A stretch of DNA of 64,000 bases from Octopus sinensis (taxonomy: Eukaryota). The position numbers were made by a program, and so were the translations under genes. The notes under the pieces are model-generated. The model did not search any database and was not told the origin of the DNA. It was given only the letters and a program-made list of their open reading frames with translations. The stretch spans positions 164,424,001 to 164,488,000 of the forward strand of contig NC_042997.1 of assembly GCF_006345805.1 (NCBI RefSeq), in the 5' to 3' direction. Shown in pieces: positions 5,740 through 62,800 of this stretch (within the stretch, counting starts at the first letter, position 1; each line of letters begins with the position of its first letter).

Positions 5740-5993
5740 CTATGTTTGAGGACTGGGAGTTTCTAACATTTCCATCAAGAATGTATCGATTGGAGTGTCC
5801 CCTATAAGTTTGAAGAAAAATAAGTGCTCCAGACACTTTAGTCCAATGCTTCTCAGTGCAGGCAAACGCAATAACAGTTTGGCAAAGCGGCCAGTTTCTT
5901 CTGGGTATTGGCATTTGCAATATTCTTCTAAACTAGCATAAACCTTTTCCCTCAGAGATTCAACTTCTTGTGTTGAAACTAGGCCTTTAGCAT
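5740..5993 (-). CDS. RXR: RXR last coding exon (LBD helices 9-12, AF-2)
   Basis: Acceptor TTTTCAG at 5994, phase 1. Encodes (D)[83 protein letters not shown], with TAG at 5742-5740. Diagnostic RXR motifs [20 protein letters not shown] and FLMEMLE. Confidence 0.97.
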
Positions 5994-7748: not shown

Positions 7749-7973
7749 CAGGGTTGAAGAGCACTATTGCTCGTAAACATCCTAATTCTGATTTATCCAT
7801 CTTCATTTCCCTCATTTTGGCTACCAGTTCAGAAAGAACTCTGTCAAAAATAGTACCTACACCAGCATGGTGTGCACTACTTCGATGAACATGAATGCCA
7901 GTGGCTAACAAGATACCATCTTTGACAGGTATAGAACGGTGAGAGAAACCAGCAATTAGCAACTCATTCCAGC
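7749..7973 (-). CDS. RXR: RXR LBD exon (helices 5-8)
   Basis: Acceptor ATTCTAG at 7974, donor G|GTAAGT at 7748; 225 nt, phase 1 to phase 1. Encodes (G)[74 protein letters not shown](D). Confidence 0.98.
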
Positions 7974-8981: not shown

Positions 8982-9108
8982 CTGCCCTCAACAATGTCAC
9001 TTGATCATCAAGAGACAATTTAGTAAAGTGGGGAATTCGTTTGGCCCATTCGACCAGAGTAAAAAGCTGTTTCTCAGCAGCCTGAAAGATATTGGTCACC
9101 GGATCCTT
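8982..9108 (-). CDS. RXR: RXR LBD exon (helices 3-4)
   Basis: Acceptor CTCTTGTAG at 9109, donor CAG|GTTTGT at 8981; 127 nt, phase 0 to phase 1. Encodes [42 protein letters not shown](G). Confidence 0.97.
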
Positions 9109-11087
9109 CTACAAGAGATGCAAATATATGTTAATAAAGAACACAGTCAAATGCTACAATATGTAAGATAGCTTTCCTAACAATTCTACAGGTAGAAGGA
9201 AAGATAACTTCTTAAAAGAATAATGCTACATGAAATGTTCTCGGAGCTTAATCTAAGGGAGGAAGGACTAAACTTCAAGAAAATTTGTTTCATTGAAGCA
9301 ACTTCAAATATTTGATGAAAATAAGATTTGCATTGTAAAGTGAATAAATTAAGATGGCAAATAATATTATAATACTGTGTGGAAGTACAATTAATTCAAT
9401 CCAATACAACACATCATTATCAACAATTTTTCATTTCTGCAAGTCAAAATATTTTAACGGTCAACAACATATATCTTGTAATTACCATTATTGTTCATTA
9501 TAAAAATTGCTGCTTCTGAAACTTAGATTACTACATGTGTAGGTAATATTTATTTGGCATGTGGCAAAAAAATGACAACTATTAATACTGTCATATCTAA
9601 CACATAATGGAAATGCCCTTCTTTTAGTCAAATGGGATAATAAAGGGGAAAGACATAATTAACATTGAAAATTTCCTTTCATTAAAAATAAAAACATTGA
9701 TCAAATACAATAAGTCACTTATTTCATACTATGATTATGTCTTCAGAACATTTAATTTGGCATTGCTTAATCTAACTTTAATCCGGCACTAGTTTTCTTT
9801 CTTTTAGAAAGTTTGTGAGCTTGTCTGGTTTGATAATAGATAATTTGAGACCCAGAAAAAATATCAAAAGTAATGTCTGTTGATTTTTGATGATGCTTAC
9901 ATCGTACATTAAATAACAACAAAAGGTTAATTACAATTTCTTTACCAAACCAGCTCATCATTTAACACCAACACATCATAAAACGTAACACACTGAAGCA
10001 TCTCAAAAGTTTCCCTTTGGTTAAATAAATTTTCTCATGTGCTAACACTTAACAACTCGCTTGTTACAGGGCAATTAGTCTTATGTTTAATAAGCAGAAA
10101 ATGAATACATGAAATCAAAGTCTTAAGAAAGAGAAAATAGAGAGATGCATGCTTTTTTTTTTCATTTCTTTCAAGGGTAGTAGATATTGGTACAGTCAAA
10201 GATAGTAAAATACAATAAGGATTTCTAACAGACTCAAGGCCTACAAATTTATAGTTGATTAAATTAACTATAATTAGTTCTTATTTTATCAGCTCCCCAC
10301 CCTAATGAAAACAAGGATGAAAGTAAAAGATAACCCTTTGAATTAATAGCATTAATGGAAACCAGCAATAAATGGTATAAACTTACTTTTCACATGTATG
10401 TGTGTGTGTGTGTACGCGTGTATGTATTTCCAACAACTAATGAAACAAACAACTCTACTAGTTTATAACTGTAAAAAGAAGACTGACAAAGAATCCACAG
10501 ATTAAATTTTGCCCAATTTTACATTTCATAAGAACATTCAAGAGAAGCTATATAAATTATTTTGAAGTGAAGTCAGTATTATAAACAAATTTATTCCAAT
10601 CAACTTATCAACCTTCAGAGGCAAAATGTCGCTAACAGAACTTCCTTTATAACCTTATTTAACCACAGCCAAATTCGATAACTTGTGAAAGATGCACAGC
10701 TGTATGAGCCAGATGGTGCTTCTCAAATATTAAGAAATTGAAGATGAAGAGACGACAACTACATTTTGTCACGGGAAAAAAACAGTCTAGAACTACAATA
10801 TATTATAACAGCACAAAAGATTTAATTAAAATGAATTTTTAGATTAGAAAACAATTATCCGTTTAATGTCAGAAGAGAATCTTTTCAATGGTGATAAAAA
10901 AATGTAAATTTACAATTTTCTAGCACAGAAATATACGTGAAAATAACTTCAGTTAACTGGTTGTATACTCAGTGGAAAATATTCCATTCTATATCTAGGA
11001 AGATATATATATATATTTATATAATTTTCTGAAAAGAAAAAGTAAAGTTTTCTTTTCTTTTTTTTTAATATTTTTTTTTACACTTAC

Positions 11088-11135
11088 GTCATCAGTGTTG
11101 CCGGCCTTTTCTAGAGTGGAACACCCATCTGAGAC
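11088..11135 (-). CDS. RXR: Candidate alternative (cassette) RXR exon, 48 nt, encoding VSDGCSTLEKAGNTDD in the helix1-helix3 loop
   Basis: Acceptor CTTATTCCTTCAG at 11136, donor GAC|GTAAGT at 11087. Length is divisible by 3, phase 0 on both sides matches the flanking exons, no stop, 25/48 GC in very AT-rich flanks. No transcript evidence available. Confidence 0.65.
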
Positions 11136-11209
11136 CTGAAGGAATAAGTGGTGGTCTCAAAACATTACTCAGAGTATAACAACATACTACTAATAACTAA
11201 GATAAAATG

Positions 11210-11256
<47 letters not shown>

Positions 11257-12895
11257 AGAAGAAAAAAATCAAAGTGGAAGCAGGGAAGGAGAGAAAAATA
11301 AAAAGGAAAGAAAAACAGGAGGAAAGAAGCAAAGATGAGAAGGAAAAGAAAAGGAAAACTAGAATGCTTTTAATAATAGAAAATGCCTTTAAAAAATCTA
11401 AGTTATTTGCAGTGATAAAAAGAATGTTAAAAATGAAATAGTGCATTTCATGAGCAAAATACCACTCACCACTGACTTAAGGAATAGTTCTAATATTTTT
11501 TACAAGATCTCAAAGTTAAGCTTAGTTTAAAGAAATTAAAGTAGCTTTTAAAAGATACTGATTTAATTCAAAATTAACAAGGCAGTGAGTAGTGTTTGAA
11601 AGTTGATCGATTAATATTTTTGATGATAGCAACAACTTATCTATAATCAAAACAGCCCAAATGCCTAAACTAGAACACAAATATCCAACTGGTTTCAATA
11701 AATCAATTGAATATAGTTTTACAAAGCCTAATTCAGATGGATTGCATTCATTTGCTTTATTACTCATTTATGATTGTCTTAAATTAGGGAATAAATTTTT
11801 TTTAAAAAAGCAGGCCCCTTTTTCCCTTAACTCTGAAATGTGAAATGAAAAAAAAAAAACACTTTTAGTTCTAAGACATGAGAACATATTTTTATGCTGA
11901 TGCTAACTAAATTATTGCAATCAGCTTTGCAATATTAAACTTCCTAGAATAAGTATTGAATAAACAAGTCGTAACTATGGAAATAACTAAATGTAGGGCA
12001 GTTGATGAAAAAAATAATGAAAAACAGAAAAAAATTTCAATCATAACTAATTCGTTTACATGGGAGATTAGCGAAGTACTTCATGAACCCAAATAGCTTG
12101 CTATAACAGGATAGTTAGTCTACTAAAAATAACTAACTAAAGCTATATGTGTTATTTAGATTAACAGATTTCCTTTGGGGTTTCATTAGCAGCTACAACT
12201 AACAACCTTTATGAATACCATTCATAGAATATTTGTGTAACCAGCAGACAGAGTATCAATGACTACTTGACCAACCAACAACGTACACAGTACCACCATT
12301 GAAGCCATTCATTATGTGCTTTAATTTTAAAAGTCTAAATATAACTGTTCCAATATTTAAACTTTACTTAAAACTTTGTTAGCTAAGACTATACTGAGAT
12401 AGTCAAATTACTAAATGAAGAACGTAAATACTTTGCTATTTATTACTGCAGATATATGAATTCTATTAATTAAACAACACTTAAGGAAAGACTGGTAAGT
12501 GCACATCTAATATTTAATAAGACTTTTTAAAACAATTCACCAGTAATGTGCTAGTTTAATAAATATATCGAGTTTATTGCACTATATAAAGAGAGAGACT
12601 TGTACCTTCTTGTGACAGCATTTCAAAGCAAGATGTTTAAATTGTATGAAACTAATATCTTATCGATATCTTACTAAGAAAAAAGAAAAAACTCAAACTA
12701 TTTTAATTTATCAACAATGGCAAGAACTCTCCCTGATATGTTAAAATTGTCAAACCCATCCAATACTCAATTGATTTTGTAAGTTGACTAAGGGCAAATA
12801 CCATCAAGTACATCAATAGAGCAAACTTATTAAAATGTAACTTATTCACTCTTTCATTATAATGGCAAATTACCATATATATATACACACACACA

Positions 12896-18337: not shown

Positions 18338-21040
18338 AGTGAAAAACATAAAATGAACCTGTACACACATGTATGCATGCATGAACTCATGTTAAAGCTT
18401 CTAAATTTTATCACTTAATTGTTTGACATAGCAATTGGATAGAGAATACGTATGTCAGTACAAGCAGAAAGAGCAACATCACAAGTAGGGGAATGAGTAA
18501 GAAGGGACAACAGAATAAGAATTATCACTCCTCTGTGGTTTTAATAAAGGGTTCAGCTTAAAGCATCAAGAACATTACTGAATACAACAGGTACTTGAAG
18601 AAAACAGGAAAGTGGGGTGTTGCAATGTGACTATAACAATCAAGATGAGGACAAAATGTGTTTGTAAGACACACAAATATACACAAAATATTTGATAAAG
18701 GATAATTATGTATAAATAGAAGTTATGAACAAAATATATGTAACTAGATGTTGCTTGAATATGATAGTATATATTGTATTTTGAAGAAAATATTATCAAT
18801 GCTTTAACATCCATTTTTCATGCTGGGCATGAAGTTCACTCCAGTCACATAGTTATGAGTTCCTTGCCACTGTACAGCATCTTAGGCAAGTCTTTTTTAA
18901 CCATACATAACCTTTAAGTCAAACCATAGAATTTTGGGGTGAACACTGAGTCCATTGCCCAGTTTTTAACATCAACAGCTGGCTTTAGAATACTTTTAAC
19001 AGAGTTTTAAGCATTTGGATGAAGTTTCTAGCCTGGGGAAGACTTGATATTCTGTAATACACTACATTAGTCATGTTTTCTTCTTCCACCTCTCTCAAGG
19101 GTCTTGGAGACCCTGCAAAAGGTCAGAAGCTCTGAAGTTCCCCTTCTGACTAAAGCAGTTACATGTCTGCTCTACAGCATATGACTCATCTTGATTCTTT
19201 ATAATCCATCTGTGGGTCCTTGAAATCAAATTTCAACCACAATGATATACAAAATCAAATCTATTACATCACAAGATTTTAAACATAACTGAGTATCTTG
19301 AAAATTCTAATCATAATTTCATCTAGGTTATTAAGTGTGGAGAAGGAAAACGGAGGAAGACAATGCTAACATTTACTTTTGACAAGCCTTGTACAATGTC
19401 ATGTTTCCTGGACAACTTAGCTATCAGATTATAACTATAGTAATTATGTCAGCTTCAGGCTAGTACAACAAAATTACTAGGCCAAATATAAATCTGCTAA
19501 AAATGTATGAATAGATGGATGTTTAAAATTGAACAATTACTGTTATCTTCATTATATAGCAAGACATATCATCATAAGTAAATAGTTACTATTTTGTATA
19601 TTTGTTGATCAAAAATAATTTCAAGCTCTCACCTAAACGCCTCAACTTTCATGACACTAATAAAACCTGAAAACAGGTTTAACCCCAAATCTTTAAATCT
19701 TAAAATTTAAAACATTTTAAGCATACTCAAGATATCTCTATCATTACATGAAACAACCAGAAATGTCTATTCCTCTTACTTCACAGTAAAGTGATTGTCA
19801 ATATAAAAGAAGTAATTCAATAATTGCTGACAGACTCCATACCAATATTTAAATTTCAGAACAATACAATCTTGGTTAGTATAGAACTGGTGTAAAAAAA
19901 CATAAAAGGGCATTTTCTTAAAATGCCTGTTAATTTTGTTTTTAATTAGTTGCAATTGTTAAAAATTAAATTTTCATACAAACACACACTCATACATAAA
20001 ACAGCAGTTTTTAAAATATTGAAACACATCAACCAGAGAAGAAGCCGTTTGTTTAAATTGCCAACATAAGCAAGCAGGTATTATTAAACCAGTGAAATTA
20101 AGATGATCAAGAATACAAAATACTGCCACCATCTATTTACAATGTATACAAATTCATCAGTAACTTTTAAATCAAACAAATTGTTAATAAGAATCAAATT
20201 GCTATTAACACAGTATAAAATAGATAAGGACAAGTATGTTTTGCTGGACTAATTTCACTTTACAAAAATAAAATCTGTCAAGGGAGGAGGGCAGTAATTT
20301 TCAATAAGAACTGACCTGGACCATGACAACCTACCTAAACCATGCCAACATGGAAAGCAGACATAATAAAATGATGATGATTATAATGAAAGTTACATAT
20401 ATTACTGATATTATTCTTTGCTAAAATATCATACTAAATATTTTTGAAATTCTTTGTTATTTTCTATGCAAATTCATTTCTTTTACATAAATTTTTACCT
20501 GACACCCTTATTTTGATGCTTCTTTCGCATATAAACACTGACATGGTGTTAGATTATTGCACTTAGTATAGCAAACATATTCCACTAATCAAATCATCCT
20601 TACTTTTATTTCACAATACAGTCTGTGTGGTGAGAAGATCTTTGTCATTAACACATATAGATGTTATACTGAAGATAGTGAATTTACTATATAGCATCTT
20701 AGCCTCAACTACCAGATATTATTGTAAGACATTATGTGTGTGTGTATGTATATCATCATCATCATCGTTTAACGTCCGTTCTCCATGCTAGCATGGGTTG
20801 GACGGTTCGACCGGGGTTCTGGGAAGCCAGAAGGCTGCACCAGGCTCCAGTCTAATCTGGCAATGTTTCTACAGCTGGATGCCCTTCCTAACGCCAACCA
20901 CTCCGTGAGTGTAGTGGGTGCTTTTTACGTGCCACCTGCACAGGTGCCAGGCGGGGCTGGCAACGGCCACGGTCAGATTGGTGTATTTTATGTGCCACCG
21001 GCACGGAAGCCAGTCGAGGTGGTGCTGGCATCGGCCACGG

Positions 21041-21485
21041 TCGGATAGTGCTTTTTACGTACCACCAGACCAGGGATCCTGGCTGGTTCAATTCGATTTC
21101 GATTTCGCTTGCCCCAACATGTCCTCACAAGCAAAGGGGGTTGGCATGGGTGCCTGTCGTACGGTCGCATTGGAGTATTTTACGTGCCACGGCCACGAGT
21201 CGGATAGTGCTTTTTACGTACCACCAGACCAGGGATCCTGGCTGGTTCAATTCGATTTCGATTTCGCTTGCCCCAACATGTCTTCACAAGCAAAGGGGGT
21301 TGGCATGGGTGCCTGTCGTACGGTCGCATTGGAGTATTTTACGTGCCACGGCCACGAGTCGGATAGTGCTTTTTACGTACCACCAGGCCAGGGATCCTGG
21401 CTGGTTCAATTCGGTTTCGATTTCGATTTCGCTTGCCCCAACATGTCTTCGCAAGCATGGGGGGTTGGCATGGGTGTCTGTCGCC
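21041..21485. repeat. 159-bp tandem repeat (about 2.8 copies) in the LINE 3' UTR
   Basis: TCGGATAGTGCTTTTTACGTACCACCAG starts at 21041, 21200 and 21359. Copies 1 and 2 are almost identical; copy 3 has a 6-bp insertion and substitutions. Confidence 0.95.
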
Positions 21486-21567: not shown

Positions 21568-23088
21568 TCACTTGTCCTGCCTGGTCTTCTCACGTACAGA
21601 ATATTTCCAAAGGTCTCGGTCTCTGGTCATTTCCTCAGTGAGGCCTAAAGTTCGAAGGTCGTGCTTCACCACCTCGTCCCAGGTTTTCCTGGGTCTACCT
21701 CTTCCACGGGTTCCCTCAACTGCCAGGGATTGGCACTTTCTCACACACCTATCTTCATCCATTCTCGCCACATGACCATACCAGCGCAATCGTCTCTCTT
21801 GCACACCACAACTGATGCTTCTTAGGTACAACATTTCTCTCAAGGTGCTAACGCTCTGTCGAGTATGTACACTGACATTACACATCCATCGGAGCATACT
21901 GGCTTCATTCCTCACGAGCTTACGCATGTCCTCAGCAGTCACGGCCCATGTTTCGCTGCCATGTAGCATGGCTGTTCGTACACACGCATCATACAGTCTG
22001 AGCGAGAGGCCTTTAGTCACCAGCAGAGGTAAGAGCTCCCTAAACTTTGCCCAGGCTATTCTTATTCTAGCAGTTACACTTTCAGCGCACCCACCCCCAC
22101 TACTGACTTGGTCACCTAGATAACGGAAGCTATCAACTACTTCTAGTTTTTCCCCCTGGAAAGTGACGGAAGTTGTGTTCTGCAGATTTTCGGAGGTTAA
22201 TGCTCCCGAGCATCTGCCACATACAAAAACTATCTTCCCAGTTAGCCTACCTTTGACATTGCTGCACCTCTTATGTGTCCATAGCTTACACTGGGTACAT
22301 CTTATAGAGTTTCTACCTACACCTTTTCTACAGATCGAGCAGGGCCATCTTCCTGAAGATATTTGTGGATTGTCTACCTTTCTACTTATTAGTACTTTGG
22401 TTTTAGCTAGGTTGACTCTAAGGCCCCTTGATTCTAAACCCTCCTTCCACAACTGGAACTTCTCCTCCAGTTCTGATAGTGACTCAGCAATAAGAGCAAG
22501 GTCGTCAGCGTAGAGGAGCTCCCAGGGACAGCCTGTCTTGAATTCCTCCGTAATTGCCTGGAGTACTATGATAAATAGGAGGGGGCTGAGTACTGAACCC
22601 TGGTGGACCCCAACCTCTACTTTGAATTCTTCTGTGTACATGTTGCCAACCCTAACCTTACTTACGGCATCTCTGTACATGGCTTGCACAGTCCTCACCA
22701 GCCATTCATCTATCCCTAGTTTCCTCATTGACCACCAGATAAGGGATCGGGGGACCCTATCAAAAGCTTTCTCCATGTCAACGAAAGCCAGGTACAGGGG
22801 CTTATCTTTGGCTAGGTATTTCTCCTGCAGCTGCCTTACCAGGAATATAGCATCAGTGGTACTTTTCCCTGGCACGAACCCAAACTGCATCTCATCTAAA
22901 CTAACTCTCTCTCTAATTAGTTGGGCTATGACCCTCTCCGTAACCTTCATTACTTGATCCAACAGCTTGATACCTCTGTAATTATTTGTATCTAGGGCAT
23001 CATCTTTACCTTTGTAGCAGTTGACTAGTATGCTGCTGCACCAGTCATTGGGTATGACTCCTTCGTGTATCACCTGGTTGACTATACG
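21568..23088 (-). pseudogene. LINE ORF2 fragment: reverse transcriptase with an inserted PHD-type zinc finger, open for about 505 codons
   Basis: RT motifs NYRGIKLL, QFGFVPGKSTTDA, FVDMEKAFDRV, GVHQGSVLSPLLF, LYADD, FRYLG, YGSETW, RLRWYGHV, GRGRPRKTW. C4-H-C3 motif CSIC...CTQC...HKRC...CGRC. The first ~26 residues of the track ORF come from the flanking microsatellite. Confidence 0.93.
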
Positions 23089-23832
23089 ATATATATACAT
23101 ACATACATACAGACAATAAGCCCTGTACATCACAATTTTTATATAAGAAAAATTATGTTCCATTTATTGGTAAAAAGATAGTTGTATTACTATTTCATAG
23201 CAGTTGTAATAACTCTTCTCAATAAGAGAGAAATTTGTCACTAAACAAATTAAGAGCAATATCTTTTATAGTCACATCCTTACACAATGATGCTACTAGA
23301 AACAAATACCTAACTTAAAATGTAGTTCTTTCATTTTTTTTTTTTTTTAATGATCATAAAACTATTAGTGTGCATGAACTGTTTTATTTCTCAAGCTCTA
23401 TTTATACTGGGATAAACTTTCTTTGTCAAATATTTCAGACTTTAATAAAAGCAAATATTTATTACATAAATCTGTTATTTTTATTTCTTTCCAAAATACT
23501 GAAATATTATTAAAATTAGTTCCAAACTCATTGAACAGAATATTTCAAAAATATGTTAACTAGAAAAGACCAACTAAAAATGTATAGTGCTCATGGAAAT
23601 TAGTTAAAAATAATAAAAAAAGTATTATAAAAAATTAGGTTAATGTAAGGTGAATCTTAATGATCATCTGCACTCCAATTTTTTTTTCTTCTTTCTTTTT
23701 TTTTGAATTATTCAATTTTAGGCATCAGTAATGCTAAAGTAACAATACATATATTTGAATTACAACAAGCCATTGTAACATCTTTAAATATAAATCGGTA
23801 AAATTGATGGTTATTCTTGCAATGAAACTTAC

Positions 23833-23981
23833 CTGGGTGTCAATATATGTTTCTATCTTTGGTTCTACAGCTAATTCAGCTTCTAAGATTCGTTCAACAG
23901 GCATATCAACATTTGCACTGCTGGTGCTCTCTACTTCGCCTTCTCCTTTTTCTTTCACACGTTGACGTTCTTCTTGAACAG
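23833..23981 (-). CDS. RXR: RXR hinge exon (T/A-box and LBD helix 1)
   Basis: Acceptor TTTTGTCTTTTTGCAG at 23982, donor CAG|GTAAGT at 23832; 149 nt, phase 1 to phase 0. Encodes (A)[49 protein letters not shown]. Confidence 0.97.
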
Positions 23982-32095: not shown

Positions 32096-33409
32096 TTTAA
32101 ATCTAGTCAGTGACCCTCAGCAGGCTGTCCCGTAGAAACCTTCAGTTGTCTTCTGCATCGTGTGAAGCTATATCCCCTTCTATTTTGTCAAAGGCTTAAT
32201 CTCCACCAAGGTGTGCACACACATTGACCCCCACATGAATTCAAAATAGCCACTGCCAATAACTAAATATCCAGCACTGAGGCTCTTCCACTGCAATAAA
32301 TGAAAGCGATTTCTAAGTGTAGCATGAGATAGTTAAAGCAGTAACAGCCTCTGCACTGCACAAGCTACTGCTAAGTACTTACTACTTCCTTCATCCATTC
32401 CACTAGCCATAGTATCTGGTGCTGCACGGGTCTTAATAAATTACCATGAAACTGCAGAAACATGAGGCCTTACACATGAGAAAAGACAGAAGACTGCAAT
32501 TCCCACTCCAGCCCAGCTTCACGACCAGACTCTTTCTCTGGCTGGACTTCTCTCAGAAGAGCCTTGCTTTTCCTATAGCCAACTGTACGTTGCATGCTCC
32601 AGAGTTGGCAGTAGAGACAGACTGTTTGTATTAACACATCGAGGGAAGACAAGAAACATAGTCCTACAATGAAGTGCTACGTATTTGCCAAGGCTGAAGT
32701 GGGAACGTTATTGCCATACATGCATATAACGGGGTACACTCAAATACTTTTACTATTTTTACTCATATCAGACAGAAGCATCAGAAAAGGGCACCTGCCT
32801 CTTGACACTCTGTGGTTTTATGAAACGCTTTTGTGTGGTGCTCCTACGATGGTAAAGAGGCGGTGATTCGTTGCAGTTGCACGATAATAATGTGAAGGAA
32901 CAATATTGTCAAACAGCTGCTACAAACAGGCCATAAGAGAGGCAGGTTCAGTATCACGTATTTGAGGATAATTCTGCTGCCTTCTATATAGTCGATAACC
33001 TCAAGTATGTTTATTCATAACATTAATGTAACCAATTCAACGGAAAGGATACCAATTTACAAAATGCATGGCAGCTACGTGTTTCATGAACCTCTTGAGA
33101 GCGACATTCCAGCTGATGACCATTAACCTCATTCAACTGGGAGCAAACTATTGCTCAAACACTTCCCTCATAGGACACACTGAAATTGTTCAACTTGTCC
33201 TCTTCCTACGCGCTTATCTGTGTGCTTCATTCTATGGCATCATTCACAAGTGTATGGTTCTAATCTGCGCTGGGCTGAGGAGTAAGGTGTTGAAATCAGA
33301 CGAGCATTGCGCAAACACGATAGCCAAGGTAGGGCTCCAAACATACATCTTTCCGCAGTTGAATGGTAATTTATTAAGACCTGTGCAATGCTGGATACTG
33401 CTGCTAGTA

Positions 33410-33768
33410 CATGATAATGCACCAATCCAAACATCTAAAGTTGTTACTGAATGGCATGAGGAACATTCTAGTGAAGTTGAGCATCTTATCTGGCCACCAC
33501 AGTCCTCAGATCTCAATATTATTGAATATTTATGGTGCATTTTAGAAAAACAAGTGAGGAGTCGATATCCTCCACTATCATCACCACAAGAACTGGAAAC
33601 TGTTCTAACTGAAGAATGGAAAAAATTCCTTTGAAAACAATTCAAACTTTGTACCAGTCTATACCTTCTAGAATTCAAGCTGTAATTACTGCCAAAGGCT
33701 GTCTATCCGATATTAAAATTAATTTGTTTGAAATTTTAAGGTGTTTCCATTATTTTATCCAACCCCTG
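33410..33768 (+). mobile_element. 3' part of a Tc1-like transposon with D36E catalytic spacing (Incomer-like)
   Basis: HDNAPIQTSKVVTEWHEEHSSEVEHLIWPPQSSDLNIIEYLW has 36 residues between D and E. After a 1-nt deletion the frame continues IPLKTIQTLYQSIPSRIQAVITAKG. Right end GTGTTTCCATTATTTTATCCAACCCCTG followed by TA. No matching left end found. Confidence 0.85.
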
Positions 33769-37571: not shown

Positions 37572-37795
37572 ATATACATACATATATACATACATACACA
37601 TACATATATACATACACATACAAATATATATATATATACATACATATATATATATATACATACATATATATATATATACACATACATATATATATATATA
37701 CACTACATATATATATATATACACATATACATATATATATATATTATACATACATACATATATATATATATACACATACATATATATATATATAT

Positions 37796-37848
<53 letters not shown>

Positions 37849-38151
37849 CATACATACATATATATATATATACACATACATATATATATATATACACATA
37901 CATATATATATATATATACATACATACATATATATATATATACACATACATATATATATATATATACATACATATACATATATATATATACATACATACA
38001 TACATACATACATATACATATATACATACATATGATTGATTGATTGATTGATTCCAGTTTCAGCTCATGAGCTGTGGCCATGCTGGGGCACCGCCATTTG
38101 GTGTTGCTACTTGGTTTCACTTCATGGAGGCTTTCTAGCAACTGCTATTTA

Positions 38152-38192
<41 letters not shown>

Positions 38193-39346
38193 ATACATAC
38201 ATACATATATATATACATACATACATATATATATATATACATACATATATATATATATACATACATATATAATATATATACATACATACATATATATATA
38301 CATACATACATATATATATATACATACATACATACATATATATATATATAATACATATATATATATTACATATATATATATATATACATACATATATTAT
38401 ACATATTATATATACATACATACTATACATATATATATATATATATATACATACATATATATATACATACATAATATATATATATATACATACATATAAT
38501 ATAATATAATACACATATATATACATACACATATATATACATACATACTATACATACATATATATATATACATACTATATATATATATACATACATATAC
38601 ATACATATATATATAATACATACATATATATATATATACATACATACTACATATATATATAATACATATATATATACATATATATACATATACATACATA
38701 TATATATATACATACATATACATACATATATATATATATACATACATATACATACATATATACATATACATACATATATATATATATATATATGTTATAT
38801 ACATATATATATATATATATGATTATATACATATATATATTATTAATATATTTATATATATATCATACATACATATATATAATATATATATACATACATA
38901 CATATATATTATATATGTATATACATATGTATATACATACATATATATATATATGTATATACATACATATATATATATGTATATACATACATATATATAT
39001 ATATGTATATACATACATATATATATGTATATATATACATATATATATATGTATATACATACATATATATATATGTATATACATACATATATATATATGT
39101 ATATACATACATATATATATATGTATATACATACATATATATATATGTATATACATACATATATATATATATATTACATACATATATATATATGTATATA
39201 CATACATATATATATATATATTACATACATATATATATATATATATACATATATATACATACATATACATACATATACATATACATACATATACATACAT
39301 ACACACACCACACACACACATACATACATATATATATATATATATA
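37572..39346. repeat. Very long (~1.8 kb) compound (TA)n/(TACA)n microsatellite, interrupted by a short SINE stub at about 38035-38150, with a ~22-24-bp higher-order array at about 38910-39200
   Basis: Directly visible. The higher-order unit is GTATATACATACATATATATATAT-like. Confidence 0.95.
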
Positions 39347-41856
39347 TTATAGAAAATGCTACAAATATGTAATATTTATTTAAAAAATTGGCCGAAGTTG
39401 CTTCTAAGTCGCAGCAGTATGAACAAATTAATATCACCTAAATTATTTCAATTGTACTTTTAATTACTTACTTAGCATTTAAGCTGGCCCAGATATTTTA
39501 CCTTTTTTTTATGTTCAAAAGGGCTCTTGGGACCAACCCTATTATGTCATTCTAAAAGTATACAACCACATCTTTAAAAAGCATGAAGCTTACAAGATAT
39601 TCCACGACTAATTGAAAATCATGTGAATAAATAAGAATTACATGTAATTTTTCCAAAACCGGACATGTCTATGTAAAATGGGTGGGGGTACTTTAATGCA
39701 CTACGACCCATTCCACCAAAATTCTATTCGGTAATGCAACAACTATACTTTGAAGCTGTAAATGACTTTCCTATTTTCTAATAATATTTGTCTGGCAATC
39801 CTGAACATTTAAAACTGTACAGTAACAAAGAATTAACTAAAATGTAAATGCTATAAATGTCGAATATGCAAGTCAGCATTTAAGCAGAGGCCTTGTGTAG
39901 CTTTCTCACAAGTTATAAAGAGGAGAATGCTAAGTAGCCTTTTTGTCTGCAAAACTATTAACTGCAGTAGATGTACAGACTATTTATTTAGTGAGTGAGG
40001 TGTACCAACCAGTAGGCTAGCTTCAACCAGAAATTCATCAAGGAAACCATGTTGAAGAACTATGATAAACACAGTAAACTTTAACCTCAAACAAATAATA
40101 GATTACCAATACTAGAAATTGACATTTTAACACAAAGAAGCTGGGTGGGAGCCTGACCTATCTAGACAATTAGTTTCTACCCCCATTTTTGCTGCAGTTT
40201 CCACTAAATCTAACTGCTGCAGATAAAAGGTCATACACCCAATCTATCAAAGTGACTGTAGTACAGACACAAAATGAGTATAAAAAGGTAAATACAAAAG
40301 GCTAAAATAGAGGAGGGGTATAACTAGCAACTTTTGATATAACTATCATTTTCAAAATAACCAGTTAAACAAGAACCAAAACATTTTTTTGTTATTACCT
40401 TATGACTTCTAAGAAGAGTTTATATGAATTTAAAATACATTATTGATTCTTAAACTAATTTTAAATTTTAGCCGAAAGCTGTCAGGTGTAAGAAAAGTTT
40501 GTTCAAATGTTTCGTTTATTTTTCACCTTTCTAAATACTTCAGACATAGGTGTAGGCATTTTTTTTCTTTTTTCAAAACATTTTTTTTGTAACTCTTGGC
40601 CCTTGACATCTCTTAGTAACTTCTGCCAATTATATACACACACACAAGTTTTGAGTTATATTTTCCCTCATTCCCTCATTGTATTAACATTGTATTAACA
40701 GATGTGTGTGTGTGTGTGTGTGATGTTCTCATGGATGAGAATGGTAGTTTTGTGGAACAAGATGTTAATCAGTGAAGCAGTTTTGTCAGATTAAACAGAG
40801 TAAGCTGAATTGTGTACTAAATATTCATTACAATGTTTAAATTCTGGCTGAGAAAACCAAGATCAAAGATATTTCAACCATGATCATCATCTCTTGACTA
40901 TATAACTAATTTTGTTCATGAGATATAAGGAGAGGTTTAACTGCTATTTCTAAAAGGTCAAAAGATCATGCAGAGGCCCCTTCATGGTGAGATTTGAACT
41001 TCCAACCATGTGGTGAGTAGTCTAGCATCTTTGCAGTTAACTTGTCTTGTAAACAATGTTTCAATAGCATCAAAATCACCATGCTCTTGACCTGGATTCA
41101 GTTTCAGAATAGAGCAATTATATTTTTCACTTCATATCAATGACATATACGGAAGTCCACTTTGCTCAGGATGTTAATATGTTTACATATATAAACTATT
41201 ATAAAAATCAGCAGTACAAATAATAATGCATATAGCCACTTATCAGAGTTGAAAGCATTTAAAAAGAAAGATGATTTTGTGTGTGGGTATATATATAGAT
41301 TCAGTTGAATTAGGTACTTAAGTTGAAGCACCAAAAATTAGGGCGGTATTATCTGTACAACTCAAAATAAGCAACAATATTGTTTAAAATCAATCACCTA
41401 TAGTACCCCACAATAAAATTTCCACTGTATTATTATCATTGGTTTTATTAGTGTCTTGCCCCTTTAACTGATAATTAGCATCATGATTAATCAGTTACTT
41501 TATACTACTTCAAAATAATCTAGACAAGTTTTATGACCATACCCACTATGTTCTGTCAACTCTCTCCTGCCCTTTCCTTACAGACACAATCCTCTAGTCC
41601 CTTAGATTTGGTATTAAAACTGAACCAAAATCCATTACAAGCTATGACCCCAACAAATCTTTTTCCTAATGTCTAGTAAATTCTAAGCTGAAGTGGTAGC
41701 AGCATAGTCTTTGTCTGTCTGCTAACTCTAGAGTATTTAAGTAAAATTATATTGTGTCCAACTGATTAAAAAATTGTTTATTTATGCAGCTGAGGATAGC
41801 CCTGCATTTAAATTGAGCCACTTGAAACAGTCATACTGCATCACCTCTGGACATCC

Positions 41857-59877: not shown

Positions 59878-62800
59878 CTATTTTACGCTGTGTATCTAAA
59901 ACTAGACTTTTTAATGTGGCAATATTTTTCTTTTCTTTTAAAAAACTATGGTGTGGCTTGACAAAAAAAAAACTGGTTACCAAATAAATATACCGAGGAT
60001 TCCCATTGTTAGCTCACCAACACAAATAGGCAAATAGAAATAATGCTAATAAAAATATAGATTAAATAGTTACAATGTGTCTTAGTATCTACAATACCTA
60101 CAATGACGCAGCTCTAATATACATTTTCTCAATATTGTAAAAACTTAAAGCAATACATTAAAAAAGTTGGAAACTTTAAACAGACAAACCCTACTATTCT
60201 CTCACTGGAAAAAAAAAAAAAAACTGAAGAGTTCAGGTAATTTACTATTCAACAAAATAAACAATGGTACACAATTTTGCAATACTATTTTCATAACTAG
60301 CTAATTCAATATTTTGTTTATTAGTTTTTGTTTTTTTTTAATTGTTAACTTCTAGTTGAATTGTTTATATTAAACCCCTTTAAGAAAAAAAAAGGTTTAC
60401 GAAGTATTTAATTGAAAATATAATATTAGTTTTTCCCATGGATCAGTCTAACAACAGTATCTCCGGAAGTATAAAGGCACATTCAATACATTAAGAATTT
60501 AGAAGATCTCCTACTGCCATCATCTAGCTTACTGTATAGTTTGAAACAATTTCTAAAATGTTATAGAATTAGAAAAATTTGTAAATGTTTTCATTTCCAT
60601 AATTACAAAGAAATGTAGATTTTATTTTTGCATTCACAGGAATTTTATTCAAAGGTGAAAAAAAGAAAAACCCGTTCAGTGCCATTGTTAATTTGAGAGG
60701 TTGACAGCATGTTACATACTAAGAATAAAAACATTTGTAGAAAGAATTCATTGTTTATGAATACATTTTTATGAAGAAACAGGAATATGCTTATGTGCGA
60801 AGATTCATAAAGAATATTAAGAGCAATATGTTACATGAGAAAAAAAAAAATTTTTAGGAGAGAAGATAAAAGAAAAAACTCTCAACACCGTAACACCGAG
60901 TTTTCTCTAATGAACTCTTGTCTTATTTACATGTCTCTTGTCACCATCACAATATGCTTCCATCAGATGACAAGTCAGCAAAATGAAATACTGCTATTAA
61001 TTAAAGATCAATTTTATCTGAATGAAGTGAAATCATGTAAGTATAAATAAATGTATGCCCACTCTAATGCACATATGCATCAAGTGAAAGTATGGGCATA
61101 TGTGCACATACGTATTTTACCAGCTGCATGTATCTGTACATGTGTGTGTACTTGTGCACATCTGTATGTATGGCAGTTATGATATAAAGCAAATGGCAAG
61201 TAAGTGATAAGATGAATAAATGCAACTAGATACTAGTTTAATGGTTCAAGCAGTCTTATCAGCAGATGAATTGAGGTTGACTCAGCACTAAGAAATTAAT
61301 GAATGATTTACAATATTAAGGGGCCTACCTTTAAAGTCTCGTTCTTTCCCCTGTCTTGACACATCTTTTAAAAAAAAAAATAAAAAATATATATTATAAT
61401 CAGAAAGTTACTAATCTTCTGATCCCTTAAAAGAAAATAAGGGTTTCTTCCATCTCAAATATTTTAACACAGATTCAAATTAATCTGTAATAAAATGGAA
61501 GCTCGTAAGTGTTTAACAAAGTCTAAATTGTGCCAAAATATTGGACGGTTGTGTAAGAGGCTTGGCCTGAAATCAACGGAAAAAAGGGAAAATAAAAATG
61601 AAGTAAAATAAACAAAATGGGAAAAATTATATATTTTAGTTTCAGTATTAAAATTAAATAATATAGAACATGACCAAGCCAATCTATGTATATATATGTA
61701 TAAAATAAATATATACATACATAAACTAGGACTGCTAAATGATAAGTGCAGTTTATAGTCAAGCTGGGTGTGAGGGGTAAGGAACAAGAAATGTTTGAAG
61801 CAATAATAGCGTGTTGTGTAGTTTCATTCAAGCCACAGCAGATTCGTCAAAGCTAAGAGGTTAGCTTAAGGCAAAGTCACAAGGACAACTAGTTGCAATA
61901 GTTTAAATACAGAAGTTTTAGGATAATTAAAAAGGGAGGGAGAAAATGACACCTAAACGAAGCTAAACATTACTACTTTTAGTTTTAGTAGAAAAAATTA
62001 GAATGGATGTATTAAACTTAAATGCTAAAGGTAATCTTAAATTTTTTTTTAAATTTAGTTTTTTTTTTATTAAAATTTTATTAGATAAATGAAAAATAAT
62101 TTTAAAAAATAAAAAAAACCTGCCGGTTACAATTTACATCTAATGTATAACCAAATATGCTTTTGAGTCACTAAGCACAATTTTCATAGCCTGGAAAAAC
62201 TATAAAGAGTGGAATATTATGGATAAAAAATAAATAATTTGAAATTTCTTTTTTTCCAACTAGTTATTAAATATAAAGAAATGAATAGTACATGCTGGAA
62301 TAACAAATAGTTGGGATATGGGTGAAAAGGCACATGCCATGTCTTCCCGAAAACAAAAAGAATGGTACTGTGATGGTGCCAGTGACTGGTGTTTATAGGT
62401 AGTACCTACAAATTATTATTGGTGAGAGAGATTAGAAAAATAGAAGGCAGTGAATGGAGAAGAATTATTATAAACAAGAAATTATAATAGATTAATGGCT
62501 GTATTTGTTTGTAGTATGTGTTTCACTCATGACTAAAGGATATCATCAAATGTGCTGTTAAGTGTTTAAGAAAAGGACTAGGCAGGTTTTGAAATGTTCC
62601 CCACATTTTAAATTTGTAAGGGATAAAAAGATAGAAAATAATCAAAAAATGTTAATCTGTTTCTTTTTTCATCATTAAAGATTACAGATTAAATATATAC
62701 AAGATACATTTTATTTTCTAAATGCAAAAAAGTAAAAAAAGAAAAAAAAAACGAGTAATTATAGTTAAAGCTCTAGTATTGATCTGTAGTTTAAAAGAAT

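What the first reader, a model, noticed from the sequence alone, without database searches (positions are those of the whole stretch)
11088..11135. Hidden 48-nt in-frame cassette exon inserting 16 aa into the RXR ligand-binding domain
Seen: TTCCTTCAG|GTCTCAGATGGGTGTTCCACTCTAGAAAAGGCCGGCAACACTGATGAC|GTAAGT on the minus strand. It is 48 nt, stop-free, 52% GC amid AT-rich DNA, and phase 0/0, exactly matching the flanking exons. Inclusion gives ...[29 protein letters not shown]... Established: the helix1-helix3 loop is where arthropod RXR/USP genes (e.g. fiddler crab, locust, cockroach) make insertion isoforms, while the mollusc RXR isoforms I know of differ mainly in the T-box. Inference: this cephalopod may have an LBD-loop isoform switch tuning ligand binding or dimerisation. 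A long pyrimidine-rich tract about 130-230 nt upstream (11260-11360, minus strand) could be a PTB-type regulatory element. Internal AGs at +7 and +25 would give frameshifted products.
Basis: partly seen in the sequence, partly recalled or inferred. Interest (0 to 1): 0.72.

Follow-up and report, generated by a model that had tools for sequence, protein, structure and literature searches.

The report
Octopus RXR loop exon, already annotated
The 48-base segment is a real, alternatively spliced exon that adds 16 amino acids to a surface loop of the octopus retinoid X receptor (RXR) and is shared with cuttlefish, but public octopus gene models already include it, so it is unstudied rather than hidden.

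Summary
Window 11135-11088 (minus strand) is a 48-nt, stop-free, phase 0/0 segment with a ttccttcag acceptor and a gtaagt donor. It lies in the 14.7-kb intron between two RXR ligand-binding-domain (LBD) exons.

Sequence alone is weak evidence, because about 15% of shuffled introns give an equally good pseudo-exon. External evidence settles it:
- Octopus sinensis RefSeq isoforms X1, X2, X4, X5, X6 and X8, and four O. vulgaris GenBank models, contain exactly ...[29 protein letters not shown]...
- O. sinensis X7, two O. vulgaris models and O. bimaculoides X2/X3/X6 skip it.
- Spliced transcript assemblies from Sepia (VSHDCPTIEKEANSEE, 16 aa) and a third coleoid (VPNDSPTLEKEPYTTEE, 17 aa) carry a homologous insert at the same junction. 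Matching skipped transcripts differ by exactly 48 or 51 nt.

So this is a conserved coleoid cassette exon in the helix 1-helix 3 loop. It is not hidden, because it is already annotated. I found no paper describing it, and published mollusc RXR isoforms differ only in the T-box. Its effect on ligand binding, partner choice or phosphorylation is untested.

Interest is modest: a known kind of isoform, known from arthropods, in a new phylum.

The parts
11088..11135 (-). 48-nt alternatively spliced cassette exon, phase 0/0, encoding VSDGCSTLEKAGNTDD (RXR LBD helix1-helix3 loop insert)
   Evidence: Sequence and translation. The identical peptide is in O. sinensis XP_029641199.1 and other annotated isoforms. 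Homologous 16/17-aa inserts occur in Sepia and sp3 mRNAs.
11136..11150 (-). 3' splice site: cacttattccttcag (pyrimidine-rich tract + CAG acceptor)
   Evidence: 9 of the 12 positions before the AG are pyrimidines.
11082..11087 (-). 5' splice site gtaagt (consensus donor)
11259..11358 (-). 100-nt pyrimidine tract (92-94% C/T), 124-223 nt upstream of the cassette exon. Candidate splicing-regulatory element or plain low-complexity DNA.
   Evidence: It is the only tract of this quality on either strand of the window. Function not tested.
23833..23981 (-). Upstream constitutive RXR exon (hinge + helix 1): (A)VQEERQR...[15 protein letters not shown], ends in phase 0
   Evidence: Aligned to Sepia and sp3 mRNAs.
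8982..9108 (-). Downstream constitutive RXR exon (helix 3 onwards): [28 protein letters not shown]...LLRAG
7749..7973 (-). RXR LBD exon ([13 protein letters not shown]...IVLFNP)
5740..5993 (-). Last coding RXR exon (DAKGL...[13 protein letters not shown] + stop TAG 5742-5740)
61329..61364 (-). Second alternative micro-exon of the same gene: 36 nt encoding (D)VSRQGKERDFK, inserted in the T-box/hinge between MGMKRE and AVQEER
   Evidence: Present or absent among the annotated Octopus isoforms and in Sepia/sp3 mRNAs.

Best explanation
The segment is a real cassette exon of the octopus retinoid X receptor gene (NR2B family), conserved across coleoid cephalopods.

SHOWN:
- The spliceosome either joins exon A (ends 23833) to 11135 and 11088 to exon B (starts 9108), or joins exon A directly to exon B.
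- Inclusion lengthens the loop between helix 1 and helix 3 of the ligand-binding domain from 11 to 27 residues. The rest of the receptor is unchanged.
- Inclusion combines freely with a second alternative micro-exon in the T-box (61364-61329) and with alternative N-termini.

INFERRED:
- The insert is acidic (net charge about -3 to -4), rich in Ser/Thr and poorly constrained in sequence, so it probably stays a flexible surface loop.
- Its likely role is to change the dynamics, charge or phosphorylation of the loop that packs over helix 3. That would modulate ligand entry, co-regulator recruitment or partner choice, rather than creating a new binding site.
- Inclusion may be the major form, at least in cuttlefish.
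For: 1. Canonical splice sites, frame and phase.
2. The exact peptide sits at the exact junction in O. sinensis RefSeq X1, X2, X4, X5, X6 and X8, and in O. vulgaris CAI9716262/63/64/67. It is absent from O. sinensis X7, O. vulgaris CAI9716265/66 and O. bimaculoides X2/X3/X6. The O. vulgaris alternative forms were built by PASA from Iso-Seq and RNA-seq (PMC10700109).
3. Fully spliced mRNA contigs, with the DBD in frame through to the stop codon, carry a homologous insert at the same junction. In Sepia (one run is S. esculenta, PMC10571815) it is 16 aa. In a third coleoid it is 17 aa.
4. Skipped mRNAs from the same run series differ by exactly 48 or 51 nt.
5. The Sepia inclusion ORF was indexed in 45 assembly blocks, plus 10+3+1+1+1 contigs for related ORFs. 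The skipped form was found on 1 contig.
6. Evolution: the insert has dN 0.21-0.43 and dS 0.34-0.57. The constitutive LBD has dN 0.02-0.04 with saturated dS. Length is kept at 16-17 codons, with a core V-x-x-x-x-x-T-[LI]-E-K...[ST]-[DE]-[DE].
7. Alignment to solved RXR LBDs places the insert between helix 1 and helix 3, where human RXR-alpha has 8 more residues than the skipped octopus form.
Against: - I saw no junction-level read counts for Octopus itself. The Octopus support is annotation models, not reads.
- Ten guessed Octopus transcript ORFs were not found by exact look-up. That test is hit-or-miss.
- Contig counts are not expression measurements.
- The peptide is weakly constrained (38-56% identity, dN/dS 0.4-1.25 on only 16 codons). 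This is compatible with a tolerated but functionally neutral loop extension.
- The structure prediction was poor (mean pLDDT 52.8), so it says little about the insert's conformation.
- The single Argonauta hians model lacks the insert.
- No functional data exist for any cephalopod RXR in the literature I could search.
Confidence: 0.93

Rival explanations
1. Chance pseudo-exon: an intronic stretch that happens to have good splice-site matches and an open frame but is never spliced into mRNA.
For: The motif pattern alone is not significant. 15% of dinucleotide shuffles of the intron contain an equally strict candidate, and the same filter picks a transposon-derived false positive at 32451-32383.
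Against: The exact peptide is in ten annotated Octopus protein models. Homologous inserts of the same length at the same junction are in spliced mRNAs of two other coleoids.
Confidence: 0.01
2. The exon is real and conserved but functionally neutral. The helix1-helix3 loop tolerates insertions, and inclusion or skipping is splicing noise with no regulatory consequence.
For: - The peptide is weakly constrained: 38-56% identity, dN/dS 0.37-1.25.
- The loop length differs naturally between phyla: 11 residues in lophotrochozoans, 19 in vertebrates.
- The loop has no predicted regular structure (low confidence).
Against: - The exon, its frame, its 16-17 codon length, an acidic Ser/Thr-rich character and a T-[LI]-E-K core are retained in both the octopus and the cuttlefish lineages.
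- Its synonymous divergence is lower than that of the flanking exons, as expected for a regulated alternative exon.
- Both isoforms persist in every species where transcripts were seen.
- An exceptional pyrimidine tract sits just upstream.
Confidence: 0.3
3. Effectively constitutive exon: the long-loop receptor is the only physiological form, and the skipped transcripts or models are rare mis-splicing or annotation artefacts.
For: In Sepia assemblies the inclusion ORFs were seen on dozens of contigs and the skipped ORF on one. Six of the seven listed O. sinensis isoforms include it.
Against: Skipped forms turn up independently in O. sinensis, O. vulgaris (transcript-based PASA models), O. bimaculoides, Sepia and sp3. 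In sp3 the count is 2 skipped contigs against 3 included. Contig counts do not measure abundance.
Confidence: 0.15

Closest known systems
Annotated Octopus RXR isoforms (O. sinensis RefSeq XP_029641195.1/96/98/99, XP_029641200.1, XP_029641202.1; O. vulgaris CAI9716262.1-64.1 and CAI9716267.1)
   Same: They contain exactly VSDGCSTLEKAGNTDD between ETYIDTQ and KDPVTN. Their whole LBD is 100% identical to the window's exons. This is the same exon.
   Different: Nothing at sequence level. These are pipeline-generated models with no accompanying description, expression analysis or functional test that I could find.
Arthropod RXR/USP LBD splice isoforms (crustaceans such as Uca pugilator; Locusta migratoria and Blattella germanica long/short forms)
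   Same: Alternative splicing of a single RXR gene gives receptors that differ within the LBD. PMC3774650 says crustacean, L. migratoria and B. germanica isoforms differ in the LBD. That the difference is a short insertion in the helix1-helix3 region (about 22-33 aa) is from my own memory.
   Different: Different phylum. The insert is 16-17 aa. I did not compare the insert sequences or intron positions, so common origin versus convergence is open. The functional differences reported for crab isoforms (heterodimerisation, DNA binding; from memory) are untested here.
Mollusc RXR T-box isoforms (Reishia/Thais clavigera and Nucella lapillus +5 aa; Chlamys farreri +4/+20/+24; Crassostrea gigas +13)
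   Same: Same gene family and phylum, and small in-frame alternative exons or splice-site shifts. The octopus gene also has this type: the micro-exon at 61364-61329 (+12 aa) and a +4 'GVNF' variant. This mirrors the scallop +4/+20/+24 scheme.
   Different: Those insertions lie in the C domain at KRE|AVQEER and affect the DNA-binding dimer interface. The exon studied here lies 50 residues downstream, in the LBD. PMC3774650 states that all mollusc isoforms known by 2013 differ only in the C domain.
Human RXR-alpha helix1-helix3 ('omega') loop with the MAPK site Ser260
   Same: Same structural position. The human loop ...ANMGLNPSSPN... aligns with the octopus insert region. From memory, phosphorylation of Ser260 in this loop reduces co-activator recruitment, which shows the loop can be regulatory.
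   Different: The human loop is constitutive, 8 residues longer than the skipped octopus form and 8 shorter than the included form. There is no detectable sequence similarity to the insert.
Littorina saxatilis RXR-like models (XP_070176755.1-58.1) with the 19-aa insert VVAKGASEGVKMDTYVDVQ
   Same: An in-frame insertion at exactly the same ...YIDxQ|KDPVTN junction in another mollusc class.
   Different: No sequence similarity to the cephalopod insert. It is present in all six Littorina models I saw (four RefSeq isoforms, two GenBank entries), so it may be constitutive or an annotation artefact. It resembles a duplicate of the preceding exon end. The genomic DNA could not be fetched.

Membership tests
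Retinoid X receptor (NR2B) gene | Nuclear-receptor ligand-binding domain with RXR-level identity to solved RXR structures | tested here: met
   phmmer against PDB gave E=1e-131 to human RXR-alpha and 1.9e-124 to Biomphalaria RXR 1XIU. All relatives carry PF00104.
Retinoid X receptor (NR2B) gene | C4 zinc-finger DNA-binding domain in the same protein | tested here: met
   There is no DBD exon inside the window. However, annotated Octopus proteins whose LBD is 100% identical to the window carry PF00105 and CAICGD...CEGCKG.
Alternatively spliced cassette exon | Canonical AG acceptor with pyrimidine tract and GT donor; length divisible by 3; no in-frame stop | tested here: met
Alternatively spliced cassette exon | Present in mature mRNA or transcript-based models | tested here: met
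   Octopus models (PASA/Iso-Seq basis). Sepia and sp3 spliced contigs.
Alternatively spliced cassette exon | Skipped in other mature mRNAs of the same species, with precise junctions | tested here: met
   O. sinensis X7 and O. vulgaris CAI9716265/66. The Sepia and sp3 transcript pairs differ by exactly 48 and 51 nt.
Alternatively spliced cassette exon | Regulated (tissue- or stage-dependent) inclusion | not testable with these tools
   No read-level RNA-seq access. Contig counts are not quantitative.
Arthropod-type RXR/USP LBD loop isoforms | Variable segment lies between helix 1 and helix 3 of the LBD | tested here: met
   Alignment to solved RXR LBDs. The weak AF2 model shows H1 at 30-37, H3 from 69 and the insert at 51-66 between them.
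Arthropod-type RXR/USP LBD loop isoforms | Insert and intron position homologous to the arthropod ones (common descent) | not tested
   No arthropod isoform sequences or gene structures were retrieved. Only the literature statement that such isoforms exist.
Arthropod-type RXR/USP LBD loop isoforms | Isoforms differ in ligand response or dimerisation | not testable with these tools
   Requires biochemical assays.
Mollusc T-box RXR isoforms | Insertion within the T-box at KRE|AVQEER | tested here: not met
   The 48-nt exon inserts 50 residues downstream of AVQEER. A separate exon of the same gene (61364-61329) does meet this feature.
PTB-repressed or PTB-regulated exon | Extended CU-rich tract in the flanking intron | tested here: met
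   11358-11259 is 92-94% pyrimidine and unique in the window.
PTB-repressed or PTB-regulated exon | PTB binding and PTB-dependent change of inclusion; conservation of the tract in orthologous introns | not testable with these tools
   No orthologous cephalopod intron could be fetched. No binding data.

The most novel reading that the evidence does not exclude
The helix1-helix3 loop cassette is an ancient, regulated switch, present before octopuses and cuttlefish or squid diverged. It would give coleoid cephalopods two biochemically distinct RXRs that differ in ligand or organotin sensitivity, co-regulator recruitment or partner choice. It would be the first LBD isoform switch in Lophotrochozoa. 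It would either be convergent with the arthropod RXR/USP loop isoforms or reflect a shared bilaterian splicing hot spot at an old intron. Vertebrate RXR genes also have an intron at this loop.
Probability: 0.3. Interest if true: 0.55.

Novelty: already known. Interest (0 to 1): 0.3.

Why it matters
RXR is the common dimer partner of many nuclear receptors. In molluscs it is the target through which organotins cause imposex.

Published mollusc RXR isoforms differ only in the T-box (PMC3774650, PMC5398557). A 2025 systematic review lists RXR work in bivalves, gastropods and chitons but not cephalopods (PMC12965858).

If the long-loop and short-loop cephalopod receptors behave differently, this would be a second axis of RXR diversification in molluscs, parallel to arthropods. 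It would also matter for anyone cloning 'the' cephalopod RXR for ligand or toxicology assays. In Sepia the form most often assembled carries the insert, so a clone modelled on other molluscs would be the minor form.

As a discovery it is limited, because the exon is already in RefSeq and GenBank models. What this analysis adds is its conservation across coleoids and the matched included and skipped transcripts.

Tried and rejected
1. First protein search with a 109-aa query (exon A + insert + exon B) returned only ORF-style genomic fragments of 189 aa or less and none with the insert. The tool appears to limit hits to about 0.5-1.75x the query length. This hid the full-length isoforms until a 493-aa query was used.
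2. Exact look-up of ten guessed Octopus transcript ORFs (MGMKRE... start, all T-box combinations with and without the insert) found nothing. This is uninformative, because it depends on where a gene caller starts the ORF.
3. Fetching orthologous genomic DNA failed. Splice-site and pyrimidine-tract conservation in other genomes therefore could not be checked.
4. AlphaFold2 on the inclusion LBD with a 38-sequence alignment gave mean pLDDT 52.8. That is too poor for conclusions or a fold search, so I did not run one.
5. Species identification of the third coleoid (SRR24189498/503/504/505) failed by literature search. By nucleotide distance it is nearer to Sepia (83.5%) than to the window (79.3%).
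6. The idea that the exon sits in a repeat or transposon is rejected. No repeat family covers 11088-11135; only the flanking (TA)n and low-complexity tracts repeat.
7. The chance pseudo-exon explanation is rejected on transcript evidence, although the motif statistics alone would not exclude it.

Full report
OBSERVATION. On the minus strand, window 11135-11088 reads ttccttcag|GTCTCAGATGGGTGTTCCACTCTAGAAAAGGCCGGCAACACTGATGAC|gtaagt. It translates without stops to VSDGCSTLEKAGNTDD. GC is 52%, in surroundings of 27-30% GC. AG dinucleotides end at +7, +25 and +30.

GENE CONTEXT. The window carries the 3' half of an RXR gene on the minus strand:
- exon A, 23981-23833: ...AVQEERQR...[15 protein letters not shown], ending on a codon boundary and followed by gtaagt;
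- exon B, 9108-8982: [28 protein letters not shown]...LLRAG;
- exon C, 7973-7749;
- the last coding exon, 5993-5740, with stop TAG at 5742-5740.
No DNA-binding-domain (DBD) exon lies in the window. The candidate sits in the 14.7-kb intron between A and B, and its phase (0/0) matches both neighbours. The assembled LBD matches solved RXR structures at E=1e-131 (human RXR-alpha) and 1.9e-124 (Biomphalaria RXR).

IS THE PATTERN ABOVE CHANCE? Not by itself. I defined a strict pseudo-exon as at least 9 of 12 pyrimidines before a YAG, an in-frame stop-free body of 24-300 nt, and a GTAAGT donor. The candidate is the only hit in its intron. However, 15% of dinucleotide-preserving shuffles of the intron also yield at least one hit. 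The same filter finds a second hit in the window at 32451-32383. That peptide resembles the neighbouring DDE-transposase fragment and is in no RXR model. The motif match was therefore a lead, not proof.

DECISIVE EVIDENCE 1: ANNOTATED OCTOPUS ISOFORMS. A full-length query retrieved XP_029641199.1, 'retinoic acid receptor RXR isoform X5 [Octopus sinensis]'. It contains ...[31 protein letters not shown]..., and its LBD is identical to the window's exons. Fifteen of the 29 members of its 90% cluster are listed:
- The insert is present in O. sinensis X1, X2, X4, X5, X6 and X8, and in O. vulgaris CAI9716262.1, 63.1, 64.1 and 67.1.
- It is absent from O. sinensis X7, O. vulgaris CAI9716265.1 and 66.1, and O. 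bimaculoides X2, X3 and X6.
- The Argonauta hians model GAB1597777.1, which forms its own separate cluster, also lacks the insert.
The O. vulgaris annotation derived its alternative forms with PASA from Iso-Seq and RNA-seq alignments (PMC10700109). In Octopus, both inclusion and skipping therefore rest on transcript evidence. The exon is not hidden; it is in the public record.

DECISIVE EVIDENCE 2: OTHER CEPHALOPODS. Logan transcript assemblies contain spliced RXR mRNAs, with the DBD in frame through to the stop codon, that carry an insert at exactly this junction.
- One species gives [31 protein letters not shown] (16 aa; P0121-P0123, P0241, P0242, P0244). One of its runs, SRR25097171, is Sepia esculenta larval RNA-seq (PMC10571815). 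The contigs are 99.3-100% identical to each other.
- A third coleoid (SRR24189498/503/504) gives [32 protein letters not shown] (17 aa; P0243).
- Skipped partners exist in the same run series: P0126 from SRR8281688 and P0124 from SRR24189505. Aligned to the included forms, they differ by a clean 48-nt or 51-nt block between ...ACACAG and the next exon.
- The Sepia inclusion ORF P0241 is indexed in 45 assembly blocks, and related inclusion ORFs in 10+3+1+1+1 contigs, against one contig for the skipped ORF. As far as assembly counts go, the long-loop form is the common one in cuttlefish.

EVOLUTIONARY PATTERN. Between the window and Sepia the insert is 34/48 nt (71%) identical, against 77-80% for the constitutive exons.
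- Nei-Gojobori estimates for the constitutive LBD (251 codons): dN 0.02-0.04, with saturated or very high dS.
- For the insert: dN 0.21-0.43 but dS only 0.34-0.57.
With 16 codons this is noisy, but the direction is what is usually seen for regulated alternative exons. There is little constraint on the peptide, and some constraint on the nucleotide sequence, the frame and the length. Conserved features are the first Val, a T-[LI]-E-K core, a C-terminal [ST]-[DE]-[DE], and a net negative charge.

STRUCTURAL PLACEMENT. Alignment to solved RXR LBDs puts the insert between helix 1 (...ELAVEPK) and the start of helix 3 (DPVTNI...). Human RXR-alpha has 8 more residues there than the skipped octopus form. 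Across 250 retrieved RXR sequences the distance between these motifs is 11 residues in most lophotrochozoans, 19 in most vertebrates, 27-28 in the cephalopod inclusion forms and 30 in Littorina models. An AlphaFold2 run gave a poor model (mean pLDDT 52.8). It shows no regular structure across the insert (H1 30-37, H3 from 69), but it is too weak to rely on.

SECONDARY CLAIMS. The pyrimidine tract is real: 11358-11259 is 92-94% C/T and is the only such tract on either strand of the 64-kb window. Its position 124-223 nt upstream of an alternative exon is suggestive. It could equally be ordinary low-complexity DNA next to a (TA)n microsatellite. A PTB-type role is untested. Using the internal AGs would indeed shift the frame.

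LITERATURE AND NOVELTY.
- PMC3774650 (2013) states that crustacean, Locusta and Blattella RXR isoforms can differ in the LBD, whereas all mollusc isoforms known then differ only in the C domain.
- PMC5398557 reports a T-box variant in oyster.
- PMC7225927 does not mention cephalopods.
- A 2025 systematic review records RXR studies in Bivalvia, Gastropoda and Polyplacophora, not Cephalopoda (PMC12965858).
- Full-text searches for RXR + cephalopod/octopus + splice/isoform found nothing relevant.
The exon is therefore known to annotation pipelines but, as far as I can see, undescribed and untested. I rate it 'already known' because the identical isoforms are public. In terms of the published literature it would be a new member of the known arthropod-type class of LBD-loop isoforms.

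MECHANISM. What is shown: alternative inclusion of a 48-nt exon yields RXRs with an 11- or 27-residue helix1-helix3 loop, combined freely with a T-box micro-exon and different N-termini. What is inferred: the acidic, Ser/Thr-rich, fast-evolving insert is a flexible loop extension. Any effect would come through loop dynamics, charge or phosphorylation acting on helix 3 and the co-regulator surface. From memory, Ser260 phosphorylation in the human loop and the crab RXR isoforms both affect receptor function in this way. Rivals are a neutral tolerated insertion (about 0.3) and an effectively constitutive exon with rare skipping (about 0.15). A chance pseudo-exon is excluded.

LIMITS. I had no read-level RNA-seq. 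No orthologous cephalopod intron could be fetched, because the gene ranges were too long. The third species is unidentified. Contig counts are not quantification.

Noticed in passing
window 61329-61364 (minus): A second alternative micro-exon of the same RXR gene: 36 nt, acceptor tttaaaag, donor gtaggc. It encodes (D)VSRQGKERDFK, inserted between MGMKRE and AVQEER (T-box/hinge). It is present or absent among annotated Octopus isoforms and in Sepia/sp3 mRNAs, where the F is a Y. Some O. sinensis isoforms add a further 4 aa (GVNF) at the same junction, encoded outside the window. This gives +4/+12/+16 variants, reminiscent of the scallop +4/+20/+24 scheme.
   Followed up: partly
window 9085-9087 (minus; codon TTT in exon B): All four cephalopod lineages seen (Octopus, Argonauta, Sepia, sp3) have [11 protein letters not shown] at the start of helix 3, whereas every other RXR retrieved has NICQAADKQLF. 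That is a Phe in place of the Cys aligned with human RXR-alpha Cys269 (numbering from memory), plus Asp->Glu four residues on. This helix lines the ligand pocket, so cephalopod RXR ligand specificity may differ. The helix 11 Cys used by organotins (…[10 protein letters not shown]…) is conserved.
   Followed up: no
window 21568-23163 (minus) and 21032-21483: A 531-aa ORF with a reverse-transcriptase domain (RVT_1, E=4e-32), i.e. a non-LTR retrotransposon remnant inside the RXR intron on the same strand as the gene. Next to it is a 159-nt tandem repeat (2.8 copies, 95% match). Together they explain the GC-rich patch at 21-23 kb.
   Followed up: partly
window 33068-33634 (plus) and 32383-32451 (minus): A DDE_3 transposase fragment (E=2e-11). 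The only other 'strict pseudo-exon' in the window (32451-32383, FHGNLLRPVQHQILWLVEWMKEV) resembles this transposase. It serves as a built-in false positive for the splice-motif filter.
   Followed up: partly
window 37572-39351: A 1.8-kb degenerate (AT)n/(TA)n microsatellite (GC 16-19%) inside the large RXR intron.
   Followed up: no
P0127, P0245, P0247-P0249 (Littorina saxatilis RXR-like models): All six Littorina models I saw carry a 19-aa insert, VVAKGASEGVKMDTYVDVQ, at the same ...YIDAQ|KDPVTN junction. Its end (KMDTYVDVQ) resembles the preceding exon end (KIETYIDAQ), which suggests a partial exon duplication or an annotation artefact. The related Batillaria model lacks it. The genomic DNA could not be fetched.
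   Followed up: partly
P0007-P0012, P0015, P0025, P0037 (vertebrate genomic ORF fragments): Read-through ORFs from vertebrate genomic contigs show a short intron inside the same helix1-helix3 loop (…NS|V…intron…FQ|TNDPVTNIC). The intron that hosts the cephalopod cassette is therefore probably ancient. Some other invertebrate fragments lack it (P0002) or have an intron after NICQ instead (P0053).
   Followed up: no
The search for homologous proteins behaviour: Hits were confined to roughly 0.5-1.75x the query length: 60-189 aa for a 109-aa query and at most 468 aa for a 267-aa query. This hid the 480-494-aa Octopus isoforms until a full-length query was used. Others using this tool should keep this in mind.
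   Followed up: yes
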